Position numbers and translations under genes: made by a program. Below the pieces are notes generated by a model that worked only from the letters and a program-made list of their open reading frames with translations, ran no database searches and was not told the DNA's origin. Source: Guillardia theta CCMP2712 (Eukaryota > Protista > Cryptophyta). From it: a DNA stretch of 64,000 nucleotides. Below, one piece after another: positions 20,610 through 29,838 of this stretch. The stretch lies in assembly GCF_000315625.1 (NCBI RefSeq), contig NW_005434545.1, positions 3,669 to 67,668 of the forward strand, in the 5' to 3' direction. Position 1 is the stretch's first letter; every line of letters begins with the position of its first letter.

Positions 20610-22355
20610 TCATCCTGCATAACCAACTGTCAGCAGGAGACCAGCCGATGTACTTCTGGCTTCATACTCTGCAGGAAGTTGTTCTGACGCTTGCATACTG
20701 GCTTTGAAAGTCTGCTTCCACACTGAAACAACGGAGTGTGGCATCCCATTCAGCAGAGCATTCACTTCGTTGACATCCTTGTCATAGAGGCTGCACATCC
20801 GTCTCAGTCAATTTCTTGACAAACATCTGCAATGGATGATAACACCTGAATTGATTGATGGCATGGATATAGTCTCCAACTTGAAGGTTCACTCTGGATG
20901 CCGGTCCCTGAATTTCATGATCAGATAGAACTTTTGGCACGAGCTGAGATGATATCTCCCACATTGGGTTGGACAGCAACGACTTCAAACGCGTTGTTTG
21001 TGCTCTTCCAAACATCCATACCGACCTTTCCCGATTCATCTCTCATCAAGACAAATTGCTCCAGTCCCTGTTTCCAGTTTTCACATCAGAATTGATTGCG
21101 TTGAGCTTAATTATGATATGAGCTTATGCACAAACCTGGTTGGGAGGCAACTCAGGGGCGACCAGCTCACTTGGGCTAGAGATCACCAACTTCACCATCG
21201 TTCCTGGTGTGCCGAGGATCAGCGCTGTGACTTGCTCTGGTGCTAACGGGTAAACGTCTTGTGCATCTACTGCGTGCAACAAATCTCCTGCCTTCACCAG
21301 CCCGCTAGAAGCAGCGGTTCCCTGCAAAACATTCAGGCTCTCCGCAAGACGAGAACGAGAACGCACGTCAGGAGTTACACCAGAAATGGTATACGGCCCA
21401 GGGTGCACACTCTTCCAGAACATGAGACCAATGCCCGATCTGCTGTTTGCAGCTGCTGATGGCGGAAGAGCATTTCGTTGGATCATCACTTCTTTCCTCG
21501 GAATTTCCTTCGATCCAGTCTGCTGCATGACAGGCGCGGGCTGCTGCTGCATGACAGGCGCGGGCTGCTGCTGCATGACAGGCGCGGGCTGCTGCTGCAT
21601 GACAGGCGCGGGCTGCTGCTGCATGACAGGTGTGGGCTGCTGCTGCATGACAGGTGCGGGCTGCTGCTGCATGACAGGTGCGGGCTGCTGCTGCATGACA
21701 GGAACGGGCTGCTGCTGCATGACAGGCGCGGGCACTGCCTGGAATGGCACTGATTGATCCTGCAAGGTTTCAGATAAGTGCTTTCGTGTTGCAAAATGAG
21801 ACCTGCGGCAACGTCGAGATAGAAAGAATCACGGGAGTGCCAGGTTGTCCGATGATCATGGAGGTCAAGTCGTTTGCCCACAGACTGTACACATTCTGCC
21901 CATTGATTTCATGAATCAGGTGTCCAGGTTGGATCATTCCACACTTCTCGGCGTTGCTCTAAGCAATAAAATCAGACAACAAACTTTTGAACACAAAATC
22001 GCAGTACCCCGGGCACGACGCCAGTAACATAGAACGGCCCGCTTTGCAACTTGGAGAATTGAATACCAATTCCACTACTCCCTTGCGGGTTTGGGTTCCT
22101 TAGAATCTGAATTTGCTGGAATTGCTGGCTGTTCTGTAGTTCATACATTCAGTCGCTTTCATACGTGCCCACATTTCAAGTTTTGCATACCTCCTGCAGT
22201 TCATCCACTGCCAGCCCAGGGATGGGATCATTGGTGATGACATCGTTGGGCTGGTAGGTCTCGATCATCTCGGAGGTCTGCAAGTTGAGCTTCTGCTCGT
22301 ACCCCACGTTCATCCCCTGCATGCCGTCAACAGGAACGTAGTAGTTCTCAGCCAT
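20610..22355 (-). CDS. Multi-PDZ-domain protein with a (PAPVMQQQ)n linker; paralog of the 12.2-14.0 kb gene
   Basis: GIGIQF/GIGLMF loops, GTAASSGLVKAGDLLHAVD..LILGTPGTMV, QVGDYIHAIN; start MAENYYVP. Confidence 0.85.
21521..21735 (-). repeat. Coding 24-bp repeat encoding PAPVMQQQ x ~9
   Basis: TGCTGCATGACAGGCGCGGGCTGC units in frame with the PDZ ORF. Confidence 0.92.
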
Positions 22356-23054
22356 TGCGCGCGACAAATGGATGCGAAGCTTGGGGGTGCAGAAACTGGT
22401 GAGTAGGGGGTGGGGTTCTGGGGGTGGGGTGGATAACCCCCCTTTTCCCACTTGAGGATTCCTGACACTTCTCAGGCTAGCACCCCCCACCTACCCTTTT
22501 CCAGTTCATTTCCACCACCCGTGTGGTACCAGTCGACGCCCCTACGGATGCTTATTGGACTGGGTTATCATTTCCGCTTCCCACCACCGGTACTGCTAGT
22601 GAAATTATAGCTCCCGTCGCATTTGTCATTTTCTAGGACCTTGGCATACTAGATTTCATATTGAGTCTAGGACCAGTGGGCTCTCTCACCCCTCCTACAC
22701 CCTAGCGTGGTTTAGGTGACCTAGGACTTTACTAGGAGAGTCTGTAACGGCTCTTTGTGAGTGACCTCTTGTACCTTATTGAGTCGTAGACTTCCTAAGA
22801 CCCGGCTAGTACCCGATTTTTCCGGTGGCCTGACACTACCCGTGGGTAGGAGCTGATAAGTACCCCACCCCGAGACTTCTCGGTGACCGGCGGCCCGGCC
22901 CTGGCAACCGTTTTTTAAAAGCCGCGGAGGCAGACTCAAGTTAAGTGAAATTTTGAGTTAACTGTCATCGGCCTGAGTTTCGGGTGGCCCGGGGCCCGGA
23001 CTGAGTCATCAGGTCCGGCGCCAAGACCAGGAGCAGCGTCGATGGAGATCCAGG

Positions 23055-26000
23055 ATGCCGCTAACAGTAGCGCCAAGGTGGGAGAGGAGGAGGGAGGGAG
23101 GACAAGAGAAGAAGCGCCACAGCCTCGAACATGATGAGGCTTCCCATCGCCATGAGACGCTTGCCTGTGATCCAGAAGGTCTCGTACAAGTCTTGGTTCC
23201 AGACTGCGATGCTGCTGACTGGCGAGGAAAGAGAGGAGAAGAAAAGGCAGCCATGAGCTTGCCTGCCACAGCCTTGAGTGAAGTCGAGGAGCATGAACGC
23301 CTGTCTTTATCCTTGAACTGCTATCCTCTCCGAGGGAGGCCCTTCGGTATCGCCTTCGTTTGGTCGTTTTCTTACCTGGACAAAAGTGGCGAATTTGTAT
23401 TGAACATCGCGAACGACAGCGCGTCTCTGGTAGCAGAGGAACTGCAGCTGTTCGGATTCGAAGTCAGACCGCGACAGAATGTCAAGAAGAAGTACATTAT
23501 GGATGAGATCTCCATGGAGAACATCGAAACTCTTTCCCACACGTATGACTGTGTGTTGGTGTACATCGCTGCGGTGAAGGCACTGTGGGTACAGCAGCAT
23601 GATGACGTTGACCGCCAGGTTGGAGATGGAGAGTGCTTTCTAGCTATAGACAACGAGAAGATCTACATTAAGGACATTTGGAAGCGATTTGAAGAGATCG
23701 GCATGGAAGGGTGAAAGTCGCTTTCAACGCTACAGGCTCTCACATATTAAGGAAAGGAAGCCGAAGATGTTATTCATGGATCTCTTTGAATCGCGATCAT
23801 CTTACGTTGACGACATAGTCAAAGAATTCAATCTTGCCAAAAAGTAGCTTACACTCCATTGCTTCAGAGCAGCACATGACATGAGCAACAGGCTGTACGA
23901 GGAGAGCCTTGAAGACATCGCCTTGATCCAATCCCAGGACACCAATGTTCCTGCGACGCTTCTCAAGGCTTCTTGCTGGCTGTTCTGCTATACGTGTCTG
24001 ATTTTCTGTCGCCAGAGGAAGTTGGACTTGCACGCAGACCTCAAGGTCGGTCGAACATGAGAGTTTCATGAGTGTATTGGCTGCGCTGTGTCTCGACATG
24101 GCCACTGGCGTCAACTTGGCTTTTTTCAGGCAAAAGAAGAGCTGAAGCGAGATCTTCCTCAACCCCCTTCAGGTACCAGCAGTGATGCCTTCTCCAGCTC
24201 GATGAATGCTCCTTCAGCCGGAACCATGGCACGCGTCGCCGTGATGCAAATCCCTCTTCGTCGAGGACATGCTACCTGGTCTTGCCTAGTAAGGCAGGAA
24301 GTCAGGAGGAGAACAACGAGCTTTAACGATCCCATGCAGGTGAAGAACCTTGGTTACAGCATTTCATTTGGAATCTGTGACGTCGACATGCTGTCTAAGG
24401 AAGGCTTGAATCGTTGACTGAAAATCATGATGGAACTTTGACCCACAGACTTACGGAGACGGGATGAACGCCTTCTGCAGTCTGAATGACGTTTTAGGAT
24501 CCACAGCAGGCGGATGGGCGTTCAATCAGGTTATGAGCTAGAGATGTCTGAGTGAAGCTGGCTGGTGACTCGCTTCTAGGTGGGTCAGTTCCTTCACAAC
24601 TCGCGAGCTGTGGAGGCGAAGGCCTTGTGGGGCAAAGCAGATCACATAGAAGCCGGTGACGTTGTAACCATCACGCTCGACATGGTCCAGGTGAACTCAT
24701 TCGAATAGAATCTCTTGCCGACCTCTGGCAGGGATCAATCAAGCTCGAGGTGGAGGGGAAGTTCAAGAGGCATCAGAACCGGCACTTCAACCAGCGGTTC
24801 GTCCGACCGGCTGACCACTCAGGCGTTCTCTTCCCGGCCGTCTCTCTCTGCGACATCGATGACGAGATTGAACTCCTGCACTTTCGGTACAGCGAGAAGG
24901 AGACGGCGGACGAGCAGAGCTTCGCCGAATTCCAGGGCTCTGTGTGGGACACGCGGAGTTCTGCGCGAGGCCTCCGCTTCGAAGGCAGAGGAGTTGTGCG
25001 AGTGGAAGGAGAGCATCTGCCGCAAGCACACGATGCCATGTTCCTCATCCACCGGCAGCCCATCACTCGAGCCCCGAAAGCATTCACAGAGCGAGGAGAT
25101 CCAGTAGGAGAATGTTTCCTTGGAGTCTTCGGTGTTCAGGACCAGGATTGCGCTGACATCTCCCCCTTCGCCTTCTCACTGAAGAAGCATCTGAGGGCAG
25201 CCCTCACTTCCAGTGACCGGCAAGATGAAGGGCCTCATGGTGATGAGGACGAGAACAAGGCTCGCTGCCTCTCGGACGTTCTTGTCCATGGAATACGACG
25301 AGATCTGGATGCGACCAGCTTGAAGTCTTTCCTCAGAGGCTGTTGTGAAATAAGTGAGGAAGAGCTGAGCGAGGCAAGTGACTTGTTTAGGGCAAAGAAT
25401 CTGAGTATCAATGAGGTCAAGAAGATCGATGACAAGTCTGTCTTGGAGGACTTGGGATTCACATCGCGACAGCAGATTGAGTCAATTCACCGAGGGATTG
25501 TCAAGGCTCGCAACAATGCCTCCGCCGAAGTTCATTTCTTGAACCTTTACTCGAAATCTTCCTTCTCCCGTCTTTTCCTTTCCAGCCTCCCTCCCCTCGC
25601 CTGGTCGCGTCAAGTCTCCTGCGACTTCCTCCGCTTCTCTCCTGATGCTTGCACGGTCAACAAAGTCGGCCAGTCCATCGCCTCTGTTACAGCCATCGCT
25701 GCTCTCAGCTCCACACTCCGGGCCGGCAAGAAGTTTGGAGCGGTTCTGACAGGGAGTGGAAAGCATTCGTGGGAGTTTGTGATCGCACGACTCAGATCGT
25801 CACAGGGAGGTGATGAAGTGAACGCTGGTTCCATCAAGCTTGGCATAGTGCAGTCGGACGCCGTCGCTCGGGGAGTCTATCACCTTGCTGCTGGGAAGTG
25901 TCAAGAAGTTTCGGCCTCTGCAGTTGTTCTTGAGTCCTCTGCAAGCTCGCAAGATGGAGCATATGAAGGCATGCATCTGCACATCACCGAGGGCATGGGA

Positions 26001-26843
26001 GCAGGTCAGGTTTCACGCATCTTTGCCTACGTCGGAGAAACTCGAACGGCTTACATTCAGTTCGAAGCTCCCGTGAGCGCGGAGTCTAGCTTCTACGCCG
26101 TGACCAAGTTGTACGGCTTTGAGGTGGGCGATGACGTGTTCTCCTGGGCAGTAGCGTCGAGCTCCATGGGCAGAAGCGCGATCATGCACGGCAACGTCTT
26201 CGAGTCTTCCTTCAAGCAGCTCCGCTTCCAGGGTGATCCTCTTGCTGTCAACCGAGTCACTGCTGCTGGCTTCGAGCTGGACAACACGTACCCCCGCATC
26301 CTCGGGCCAGCGCTCAAGGAGGGAGACACGCTGACTGTGTGGCTTGACCTCGACACCGGAGTGCTCGCGTTCTCGCTCAATGGCGAGCGGCTGGGAGAGA
26401 GCGTGGAAGGAGTGCGAGGGCCCGTCCTCCCCGCCTTCTCTTGTCCCTCCTCCACTGACTGTAGCATCCAACTTAGAAACTACCGCCGCTGGGCCCCTGA
26501 GAGTGGATGGATGAGCAGCGAAGAAGCAGAGAACATGGGTTTCAGTGAGGAGGAGGTGGAAGCGTTGAAGCAGATATTCAGGTTTGACCCTCCTGATCTT
26601 GTTGCAATCTCACTGGTAGGGAGCAGGAAGAACGAGTCCAACGCAGAGCTGAAGATAGCGGACATCCGCAAAGTGTTCGCCGAACTCGGACTGAACCTGA
26701 CGGATGCCGACATGCAAGGTCACGTGCAGGCAGTGGACGTGGATGGGTCAGGTCGCCTGGATCAGATCGAGTTCTTACATCTCATCTCCAACCTCAAGCT
26801 GGCTGACCTATGGAGCCTCGACAAGCTCACAGCGCACAAGTGA
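23055..26843 (+). CDS. Multidomain protein: inactive caspase-like (C14) domain, SPRY, SAM-like, SPRY (with insert), EF-hand pair
   Basis: Caspase-like YPLRGRPFGIAFV..LQLFGFEV..YDCVLVYIAAVG..GKPKMLFMDLF after removing introns 23574-23618 and 23711-23756. SPRY GDVVTITLDM..LFPAVSL and GKHSWEF..GDTLTVWLDLDTGVLAFSLNG..VLPAFS. SAM-like IDDKSVLEDLGFT. EF loop DVDGSGRLDQIE. Confidence 0.75.
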
Positions 26844-27163: not shown

Positions 27164-29838
27164 ATGGAGGACTCCGACCTGAGGGACTACGAGGTTCTGA
27201 ACCAGCTCGCCAAAGGAGGTCAGGGGGTCACAAGCAGGGTCCGCAGGATCTACGACAATCGTGTGCTGGTTCTGAAGCAAAGTTTCTGCGATGACTGCCG
27301 AAGTGCAAACTCAGCTTTGCTCGAGGCCAAGCTGCTGAAACAGATTCGACACCCGTACGTCAACAGGTAGTCTAGCAGAGCCTCTCAGTCTCGTGGGTGA
27401 GCCGTGCTTGCCCAGGTACGAGGATGTGTTTCTGAGTGAGCAAGGCAAGCAGCTTGTTGTCTGCACAGTCATGGAGTACTGCGAGGGCGGCGACCTGGCG
27501 AGATATCTCATCACGTACAAGAAGCACAGGACGCTGGTGGACCCCATGAGGGCCGTGAGGTAGGAAAGTCGCTGCTCCAAGAGAAGCTGACGGCATGTCG
27601 GTCAGATGGATGCAGCAACTAACATCTGCCATCGCGCACCTGCATCAGCAGAAAGTGAGCTCAGCTTGTGCCTCGCTCTCTGCTACTGACGGCCCGTCTA
27701 GATCGTTCACCGAGACATGAAGCCGCAGAACGTGTTCTTGTTCTCAGAAGACAGCCTCAGGATAGGAGACTTTGGACTCGCACAGACCATTGAACGAGGG
27801 AAACGAACGTCGCAGGTGCTGCTGCAATGCCTCTCCTCTCCTCCCTTCTTTCCGTTCTGTCCTCATCTTGTAACTTGTCTTCTTGTCGCAGGTTGGAACC
27901 CCCTGCTACATGGCACCTGAGGTTCTCTACCGCGACGAGTATGCGGAGACGGTCGACGTGTGGGGCATCGGCTGCATCGGCTACGAGTGTCTGTCACTTC
28001 AGTTTCTCTGGCAGAGGAAGGGCATGCTCGCTGCGCAGGTCGAGGTCGACCCCATCCTCCCCCAGCACCTCCCCGACCTCTATCCCTTCTTCCTCCGCGA
28101 CGCCGTCGCCAGCTGCCTTGCCTGCTCGCCCCATCGGCGGCCGCCCGCATCGTCCTTGCAGACTTCCCTGCAGCAGGAGAGCGGGCAGGCTCCGAGTGAG
28201 AACCTCGGGCTGGTGGAGGCGCTCGAGAACTTTGGGAAGGCGTTTGGGTCCTGGTTGCCGCTCGGAGGGAAGGAGGAGAAGGAGAAGGGGAAGGAGGAGG
28301 AGGTGCACGTAGAGAAGGCTCTCCTCTCAGAGCGAATGGAGCCCAGCCAGGCAGGGCTGTCGATGGGCGTTGAAAGGAAGCAGGAGAGGAGCAGGACTCT
28401 GGCCCCTCAGACTCGCAGGACGAGCTTGAAGGGCGTGGACATCAAGTCGCAGCCTCTGAGGGGTGACGTCACGCAGCCAGCAGTCGAACGAGTCAGCGAG
28501 AGGACGGCGAGCGTTTCAACTGCCAGTCAGTCGCACAAGGCGCGGGAGGAGGCAGAGCAGAGGGCCGATGACGTCAGGCGAGAGCAGCTGCGAGCCACGT
28601 CGGGCAGAAAGCTTCCTGCCATGGTGGAGGAAGCAAACGAGACCGTGCGAGAGATTCTCTCAAAGATCAACTCGACTAGCCGAGGGGAAGGCAGCAACTC
28701 GAGCTCGAGCTCAGAGGACATTGTCGCTCCCGCAAGAACCCCAGCAGGACTCCCTCGACTCCCTCGACTCCTGCACGCCTGAGCGCCCTGAGCTCGTCGA
28801 GCGTCAAGGAGCGGGACGGCAGCGGAGGGGAGGAAGCTGAAATCCCTCCGCACGTGCTCGAGGAATACCGGGAGAAAGGCTTGTTCGGCGTTGACCCTCG
28901 ATGGCGAAGTCCGCTGCAGGTCTAAAGGAGGCGAGGGGAAAGGGGGACAGGAGGGAGGGGGAGGAGAGAATGGAAGGAGGGAGGGTGGGAGGGTGGGAGG
29001 GAGGGAGGGAGGGTGGGTTGGGGGGGGGGGGGGGGGGGGGGGAAAGAAAAAACCGCTCCNNNNNNNNNNNNNNNNNNNNNNNNNNNNNNNNNNNNNNNNN
29101 NNNNNNNNNNNNNNNNNNNNNNNNNNNNNNNNNNNNNNNNNNNNNNNNNNNNNNNNNNNAAGGGCTACTTCAGGCGTCTCATTCAAGCAGAGCAGCAGCT
29201 CGATCATTCGCGCGAGGTTGGAGAACGAGCTCGAGCCCGTCCTCCCTCATCCCCAGCGAGCACAGGCGAGCAGCCTCCCTCCTCCTCCAGCGTGAAGAGG
29301 GACAAGGACAAGAGCGGGTCCTGGCTGTCGCGGACGCTGAGCGGGAGAGGATTCGCCAAGACAAAGAAGATGGAGATGGGGGGCGAGCTGGACTTCGAGC
29401 TGGGGGGCGACAAGAAGATTCTGATCGAGAAGTTCTCGAAGCAATTCGAGCTTGTGTTCCCTCGCCAGCAATGGCTGCTTGCGAAAGAAGCGACGCGGCG
29501 AGAAGGAGAGGTGAGAGAGGTGGAGTGAGGAGGGAGGGAGTCAGCAGGGGAAGGCAGAAAGGAGAGACGGAAGGGCAAAGGAGGAGGAGAAGGTTTGTGT
29601 TAACCTTTGAATCTCCTGCAGACATATGGGACAGACGAAGAGATTCAAAGAGAATTCACTCGACTGTCAGTAGCTCTTCTCGCACCTTCCTCCTCTCCTC
29701 TCCCTCTTGTTCCTCGCATCAGTTCCTCCCACTCCTCTTCGTCCTCCTCGTGTTCGTTCTCTTACACACGTGTTCCACAGATTCGGTCAGCCCAAGTCAA
29801 GATTCATCGGAAGTTCGGACCGGCTGATGGCTGTGTGA
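27164..29838 (+). CDS. Ser/Thr protein kinase, NEK/NIMA-like; spans an assembly gap
   Basis: LAKGGQG, VLK, MEYCEGGDL, HRDMKPQNVF, DFGLA, GTPCYMAPE, DVWGIG. Joining of the 3' part across the gap is inferred. Confidence 0.88.
29060..29159. other. Scaffold gap (100 N)
   Basis: Run of n after poly-G. Confidence 1.

What the first reader, a model, noticed from the sequence alone, without database searches (positions are those of the whole stretch)
23055..26843. Pseudo-caspase-SPRY-SAM-SPRY-EF-hand fusion: a cFLIP-like signalling scaffold in an alga
Seen: after removing two 45-46 nt introns the N-terminus follows the caspase p20 pattern (YPLRGRPFGIAFV; LQLFGFEV; DCVLVYIA-AVG; GKPKMLFM-DLF), followed by a p10-like segment (GSW..ESFMSVLAAL). 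Established: animal caspases read Y-x-M-xxx-PRG-x-ALI, LGFEV, DC-xxxx-LSHG and GKPKLFFIQAC, and the KPK motif is typical of caspases rather than metacaspases. Here both dyad residues are replaced (His to Val, Cys to Phe). SPRY/B30.2 and SAM are common in immune adaptors, and EF-hands sense Ca2+. Inference: an undescribed Ca2+-responsive, oligomerising pseudoprotease adaptor, possibly part of a cryptophyte cell-death or antiviral pathway with active caspase partners elsewhere in the genome.
Basis: partly seen in the sequence, partly recalled or inferred. Interest (0 to 1): 0.8.

Follow-up and report, generated by a model that had tools for sequence, protein, structure and literature searches.

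The report
Dead animal-type caspase scaffold in cryptophytes
The alga Guillardia theta and related cryptophytes keep a conserved gene whose front end resembles the large subunit of animal caspases, the cell-death proteases generally thought absent from algae, but it has lost its cutting residues and is fused to protein-binding and calcium-sensing modules, so it most likely works as a signalling scaffold rather than a protease.

Summary
The gene is G. theta GUITHDRAFT_166016. Its N-terminal domain is a caspase p20. Sequence profile, fold and language-model searches rank animal caspases first, ahead of metacaspases and MALT1. The dyad is lost (His to Val174, Cys to Phe214), and no homologue that covers those columns has either residue. 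Homologues come from Rhodomonas salina and aquatic metagenomes. An uninterrupted 566-aa orthologue joins p20 to SPRY1, and another orthologue is collinear into SPRY2, so the fusion is real. SAM is supported by fold; one EF loop is canonical.

Two corrections. No active animal-type caspase was found in the genome; the one paralogue found also lacks the His, so a cFLIP-like mechanism is unsupported.

Best reading: a conserved, catalytically dead, Ca2+-tuned scaffold. I found no paper on it. The scan noted other G. theta pseudo-caspases, but none of the notes I saw describe this one. No RNA check was possible.

The parts
23055..26843 (+). Whole gene (GUITHDRAFT_166016). Revised exons: 23055-23573, 23619-23710, 23757-23843, 23892-23967, 24016-24045, 24130-24172, 24218-24288, 24340-24381 (or -24399), 24449-24529, 24580-24690, 24732-26843 (possible in-frame intron 26582-26626). 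Start codon uncertain.
23316..23787 (+). Caspase p20-like domain (aa 88-214), animal-caspase type, split by two introns
23619..23621 (+). Val174 in the catalytic His column (V, F, W, R, S or C in homologues)
23785..23787 (+). Phe214 in the catalytic Cys column (Phe in every homologue that covers it; motif D-x-F)
23794..24150 (+). Long two-helix segment (coiled-coil-like) where the caspase intersubunit linker would be; conserved in orthologues
23968..24015 (+). Probable 48-nt GC-AG intron retained by the public model; orthologues have a 16-aa gap exactly here
24014..24100 (+).
24220..24884 (+). SPRY domain 1 (aa about 300-437), including exon 24340-24381/24399 that the public model skips
   Evidence: Pfam E=1.5e-4
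25017..25316 (+). Candidate displaced p10 (aa 482-581): LPxxxD plus hydrophobic strand, a P-x3-[ST]-x-R-x4-G loop and two helices; helix register unresolved
   Evidence: profile tests P=0.02 and 0.006; orthologue chain z=3.9; model alignments to full caspases run to residue 501-507; PDB and hhalign tests not significant
25305..25529 (+). SAM domain (aa 578-652)
   Evidence: pLDDT about 90, VIA Z 8.8 to Hyphen SAM and many other SAMs; conserved in orthologues
25530..25580 (+). Candidate last caspase strand after the SAM; orthologues read SQKPQ or SQQPQ here
   Evidence: profile test not significant; inference
25581..26480 (+). SPRY domain 2 (aa 670-969), interrupted by an about 85-aa module at 25857-26123 that recurs in many large G. 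theta proteins
   Evidence: collinear in L034/L035
26541..26798 (+). Calmodulin/centrin-like EF-hand pair: first loop degenerate, second loop (26736-26771) canonical D-x-D-G-S-G-x-L-D-x-x-E
   Evidence: Pfam EF-hand_7 E=2.3e-5, below cut-off

Best explanation
A conserved cryptophyte pseudoenzyme scaffold. Shown: one protein carries a caspase p20 closest to animal caspases and lacking both dyad residues, then a helical segment, SPRY1, a SAM, SPRY2 and an EF-hand pair. Probable: the caspase fold is completed by a p10 behind SPRY1, so the helices plus SPRY1 are inserted in the intersubunit linker and the SAM near the end of p10. Inferred mechanism: the dead caspase fold is a rigid, possibly dimerising hub with its active site plugged by the invariant Phe. 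The two SPRY domains recruit client proteins, the SAM drives oligomer or polymer assembly, and Ca2+ binding to the one canonical EF loop tunes assembly. It signals by clustering partners, not by cleavage and not by pairing with an active animal-type caspase. Single copy and 48-62% identity among distant orthologues fit a stable cellular signalling role better than a fast-evolving immune receptor.
For: Dyad loss across the family. Animal caspases are the nearest non-family hits among 1.84 billion proteins, in PDB by profile and by fold. In a tree, family + C9 paralogue + insect caspases stand apart from 12 other G. theta C14 domains at 98/97. Fusion in one uninterrupted orthologue ORF, 41% identity over 551 aa; collinear orthologue into SPRY2; R. 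salina homologue. SAM by fold. No active animal-type caspase found in the genome.
Against: EF-hand conservation is untested because orthologue contigs end before it. p10 evidence is mixed: the G. theta sequence alone is not above shuffles (z=1.2) and model pTM is 0.34. The tree has few references and long branches (family stem 1.64). Local active-site motifs (A/C-G-x-G, D-x-F) look more paracaspase-like than animal-like.
Confidence: 0.6

Rival explanations
1. cFLIP-like regulator: the dead caspase fold heterodimerises with an active C14 protease (for example the paracaspase-like L002-L006 proteins) and switches it in cell death or defence.
For: G. theta has many C14 proteins with an intact His-Cys dyad and forms apoptotic bodies with raised metacaspase expression (PMC12462507). 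The fold matches c-FLIPL at Z 9.0. The C9 paralogue keeps Cys.
Against: No active animal-type caspase found. No DED or CARD. The dimer-interface strand is not securely identified and lies next to a SAM insert. The active C14s fall on the other side of a long branch.
Confidence: 0.15
2. Immune sensor or decoy: the pseudo-caspase is a bait for viral or bacterial caspase inhibitors or substrates, and the SPRY domains are pattern sensors that nucleate a SAM polymer.
For: SPRY/B30.2 and SAM occur in immune adaptors (general knowledge). The candidate p10 keeps an invariant Arg at the place of the caspase S1-pocket Arg (register inferred). Unchecked scan notes list many caspase-fold immune-like fusions in this genome.
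Against: Single copy and high conservation, with no expansion. The p20 S1 residues (Arg179 and Gln283 equivalents) are lost. No viral relative found.
Confidence: 0.15
3. The animal affinity is misleading: the domain is a very divergent p20 of paracaspase/orthocaspase origin, without p10, acting as a passive structural domain in a SPRY-EF-hand Ca2+ scaffold.
For: D-x-F and x-G-x-G motifs mirror DxC and AGHG of para- and orthocaspases. p10 is not detected by HMM or hhalign. aa 457-478 resemble SPRY N-terminal strands. Branches are long.
Against: Sequence, profile, fold and language-model searches all put animal caspases first, with MALT1 and metacaspases lower (Z 9.6 and 11.5 vs 14). The C9 paralogue has RGLAII and PSLKGRPKIF motifs.
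Confidence: 0.1

Closest known systems
Animal caspases (C14A; caspase-2, -3, -6, insect effector caspases)
   Same: p20 fold and sequence pattern (Y-x-L-xx-RP-G, G-F/Y-E-V, GKPK); best hits by sequence, profile and fold
   Different: No His, no Cys, no QAC, Arg179 equivalent lost; no CARD or DED; about 270 aa (helices + SPRY) between p20 and the candidate p10; SAM, SPRY and EF-hand fused
c-FLIPL and other pseudo-caspases
   Same: Caspase fold with a disabled dyad, likely acting as a scaffold; fold Z 9.0
   Different: No tandem DEDs; no active animal-type partner found in the genome; different accessory domains
Reticulomyxa filosa caspase-like proteins (Klim et al. 2018, PMC5982838)
   Same: Precedent for caspases grouping with animal ones in a non-animal eukaryote
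G. theta metacaspases and metacaspase-like proteases (PMC3734836) and cyanobacterial pseudo-orthocaspases (PMC6426788, PMC5756287)
   Same: C14 p20 fold; pseudo-variants are known in this superfamily
   Different: No significant similarity of this p20 to the 28 G. theta C14 hits; separate side of the tree; different dyad substitutions

Membership tests
Peptidase family C14 (caspase-hemoglobinase fold) | p20 caspase fold | tested here: met
   Foldseek E 1e-7, VIA Z 14, rmsd 2.5 over 117 aa; Pfam above cut-off in orthologues
Active C14 protease | His-Cys dyad | tested here: not met
   Val174 and Phe214; absent in all homologues covering the columns
Animal caspases C14A | p20 closer to caspases than to meta- or paracaspases | tested here: met
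   (limited taxon sampling, long branches)
Animal caspases C14A | QACxG motif and Asp-specific S1 pocket (Arg179, Gln283, Arg341) | tested here: not met
   D-x-F instead of QAC; Arg179 column not Arg; only a candidate Arg341 equivalent
Animal caspases C14A | p10 subunit completing the six-stranded sheet | tested here: inconclusive
   for; against:
cFLIP | Tandem death effector domains | tested here: not met
   No DED or CARD in Pfam scan of P0001
cFLIP | Heterodimer with an active caspase-8-like paralogue | tested here: inconclusive
   No active animal-type paralogue found (exon-by-exon search can miss genes); binding not testable
Metacaspases (types I-III) | Sequence grouping with metacaspases; DxCH motif | tested here: not met
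SAM domain | Five-helix SAM fold | tested here: met
   VIA Z 7-8.8 to many SAMs, rmsd about 2; no Pfam or PDB sequence hit
SAM domain | Head-to-tail polymerisation | not testable with these tools
   needs an assay
SPRY/B30.2 | Pfam SPRY profile | tested here: met
   40.5 bits for the whole protein over two stretches; 26.3 bits for SPRY2 alone
Canonical EF-hand | 12-residue loop with ligands at 1, 3, 5, 9, 12 and Gly at 6 | tested here: met
   second loop only; first loop degenerate; Ca2+ binding not measured

The most novel reading that the evidence does not exclude
Cryptophytes carry a genuine branch of the animal-type caspase lineage, surviving only as pseudoenzymes (this gene and the C9 PA-caspase-SPRY paralogue). 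Its full p20/p10 fold has been opened by SPRY and SAM insertions to build a Ca2+-gated polymerising death or defence scaffold, in the alga recently reported to make apoptotic bodies.
Probability: 0.25. Interest if true: 0.85.

Novelty: new variant of a known kind. Interest (0 to 1): 0.62.

Why it matters
Reviews and the 2025 paper on G. theta apoptotic bodies state that caspases are not found outside animals and that this alga relies on metacaspases (PMC5756287, PMC12462507). The one protist exception I found is Reticulomyxa (PMC5982838). A conserved cryptophyte family whose p20 is closest to animal caspases adds a further eukaryotic lineage to the question of when true caspases arose, and makes it testable with a taxon-rich tree. 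It is also an unusual case of a dead caspase fold kept as a chassis for inserted SPRY and SAM domains. The interest is tempered because the enzyme is dead, no pathway is shown, and pseudo-caspase fusions of other types appear common in this genome.

Tried and rejected
Protein translations of the stretch were accepted by other tools afterwards. My revised spliced model was built and scored only in local scripts and was not sent to any search; searches used single exons or the public model P0001 by reference. Two Pfam calls failed on my own frame slips. Word searches found only the gene itself. The unspliced first ORF finds nothing in PDB or Pfam. The single-sequence fold was poor (pLDDT 48). 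A GKPK DNA pattern occurred at chance level. Viral scans found no family or animal-type caspase. The prokaryote scan gave one animal-like fragment in a MAG. p10 tests by PDB HMM and hhalign were negative or weak. In one search the fourth block was distorted by a one-row Trp column and was redone. Alignments A10 and A11 were discarded as misaligned; A9, used for folding, has about 60 and 25 misplaced residues in two rows. Paper searches for this architecture gave 0 hits.

Full report
Identity and gene structure. The long 3' ORF is identical to part of Guillardia theta GUITHDRAFT_166016 (P0001, 1089 aa, labelled hypothetical and partial), which maps as nine exons over 23055-26843. Homologues also correct the public model: 23968-24015 is probably a GC-AG intron, and an exon starting at 24340 is skipped. 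The local alignment score to orthologue P0036 rises from 1033 to 1096, or to 1114 with a GA donor at 24400. The revised joined model was used only in local scripts and was not sent to any search.

One gene. P0036, from marine assemblies, is an uninterrupted 566-aa ORF running p20, helical segment, SPRY1 and the next region, at 41% identity over 551 aa. P0004 also runs from p20 into SPRY1 in one ORF. Contigs L034/L035 carry a collinear orthologue into SPRY2. In G. theta everything from the end of SPRY1 to the EF-hands is one open frame. One homologue fragment is from Rhodomonas salina. The others are environmental and presumed cryptophyte by inference.

The caspase domain. Pfam C14 scores 20.0 bits in G. 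theta (cut-off 21.4) and 22-28 bits in orthologues. Among 1.84 billion representatives, the p20 region finds 20 proteins: 17 family members and three insect caspases (best E 1e-6). A family profile against PDB returns animal caspases in all 60 rows shown, best caspase-2 at 2.6e-5. An AlphaFold2 model built from family sequences only matches caspase-2 at Foldseek 1e-7. It matches animal large subunits at Z 13-14, versus Yca1 11.5, MALT1 9.6 and c-FLIPL 9.0; large-subunit-only chains are favoured by length, so this gap is not decisive alone. The language-model search also gives caspase clusters at 0.93. A tree of 23 p20 domains separates family + C9 paralogue + insect caspases from twelve other G. 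theta C14 domains at 98/97. It lacks MALT1, Dictyostelium, Reticulomyxa and bacterial rows and has long branches, so it shows affinity, not origin.

The dyad. The His column is Val174, and V, F, W, R, S or C in homologues. The Cys column is Phe214, and Phe in every homologue that covers it. A free His column with an invariant Phe suggests ancient loss of catalysis with the site plugged (inference). The Arg179 and Gln283 equivalents are also gone. The local motifs (A/C-G-x-G, D-x-F) echo paracaspase-type AGHG and DxC, a caution against calling this a caspase outright.

The p10. What follows p20 is a conserved two-helix segment and SPRY1. A better candidate lies at aa 482-670. It has an invariant LPxxxD plus a hydrophobic strand, like insect LPSNADFLIAY, and an invariant P-x3-[ST]-x-R-x4-G loop of the same spacing as caspase PGYxSWRxxxxG (the latter from memory). 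Two helices and the SAM follow, and orthologues read SQKPQ or SQQPQ directly after. Against p10 profiles from sequences fetched here, the strand scores P=0.02 and one helix P=0.006. The orthologue gives an ordered chain at z=3.9, but G. theta alone gives z=1.2. In the model, full-length caspases align over 144-167 residues ending at model 498-507, against about 120 for p20 alone, which suggests those helices dock on the p20. The post-p20 helix could account for part of that gain, and I could not inspect coordinates. PDB HMM and hhalign tests are negative or weak, pTM is 0.34, and the helix register is ambiguous. I put a displaced p10 at about 55%.

Other domains. SPRY twice. SAM at aa 578-652 is invisible to Pfam but supported by fold (Z up to 8.8, many SAM rows, pLDDT about 90). 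The EF pair is calmodulin/centrin-like with one canonical loop; its conservation in orthologues is untested. SPRY2 holds an about 85-aa module found in at least 19 other G. theta matches, many in ORFs of thousands of residues, with no Pfam or PHROG name.

Partners. The genome has at least 28 C14 matches, most with an intact dyad and of metacaspase, paracaspase-like or metacaspase-like type. An animal-type p20 profile finds only this gene and one paralogue, G000:C9 (L033:2611-5718): PA domain, pseudo-caspase with an insert and a clear p10, then SPRY. It reads C-G-R at the His site, like several family members, and keeps the Cys. The profile included that paralogue, so its own hit is circular; the weak independent link is (E=0.02). 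An insect caspase query finds nothing significant. The search is exon by exon and could miss intron-rich genes, but there is no support for an active animal-type partner.

Mechanism. Shown: architecture, dyad loss, conservation. Inferred: a dead caspase chassis displaying two SPRY binding modules and a SAM assembly module under EF-hand control, signalling by clustering (0.6). Rivals: cFLIP-like control of a non-animal-type C14 (0.15), immune sensor or decoy (0.15), misleading animal affinity (0.1).

Comparison with what is known. It works like other pseudoprotease scaffolds, but fails membership of active caspases (dyad, QAC) and of cFLIP (no DED). Caspases are described as animal-only (PMC5756287, PMC12462507), with Reticulomyxa as a reported exception (PMC5982838). 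The survey of G. theta C14s lists types I, III and metacaspase-like only (PMC3734836). Searches for this architecture gave no paper. Earlier scan notes report other pseudo-caspases in this genome (unchecked), so a dead caspase fusion is not rare here; the animal-type p20 and the insertions are what stand out. Verdict: new variant of a known kind, interest 0.62.

Noticed in passing
L033:2611-5718 (G000:C9:219610-222717): Intronless 1035-aa paralogue: PA domain, animal-type pseudo-caspase (His to Arg, Cys kept, PSLKGRPKIF motif) with a long insert before a recognisable p10, then SPRY. Its p20 motifs look more animal-like than those of the gene in hand; a C2-domain ORF lies upstream.
   Followed up: partly
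window 24400-24448: Homologues align without gaps if the intron starts with GA at 24400 (49 nt, GA-AG) rather than GT at 24382 (67 nt): a possible non-canonical donor or a sequence error.
   Followed up: partly
window 25857-26123; L058-L064: An about 85-aa module (S-S-x-D-x-x-Y-x-G ... G-x-G-x-G-Q-x-R-x-I) inserted in SPRY2 and repeated in at least 19 other G. theta places, many in 2,000-10,500-aa ORFs; no Pfam or PHROG match.
   Followed up: partly
window 26582-26626 and 23968-24015: In-frame 45- and 48-nt introns probably retained by the public gene model.
   Followed up: partly
G000:C97:154810-233840 (L013, L015-L017, L020, L021, L025, L028): Cluster of at least eight metacaspase-like genes within about 80 kb, most near-identical with about 625-aa ORFs; one has the catalytic Cys replaced by Gly (L028).
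   Followed up: no
L007 (G000:C13:304739-305647): Paracaspase-like gene with His kept and Cys replaced by Phe (D-V-F), an independent-looking parallel to the D-x-F seen here.
   Followed up: no
L055:1420-1737: Animal-type caspase fragment (LSYG, NKPKLFFIQAC) on a 9.6-kb contig of an Ekhidna MAG; probably eukaryotic contamination.
   Followed up: no
window 21124-22360 (-) and 27164-28782 (+): Neighbours: an upstream gene with about nine Q/P-rich 8-aa repeats before a PDZ-like segment, and a downstream intron-rich protein kinase; no link to this gene was tested.
   Followed up: no
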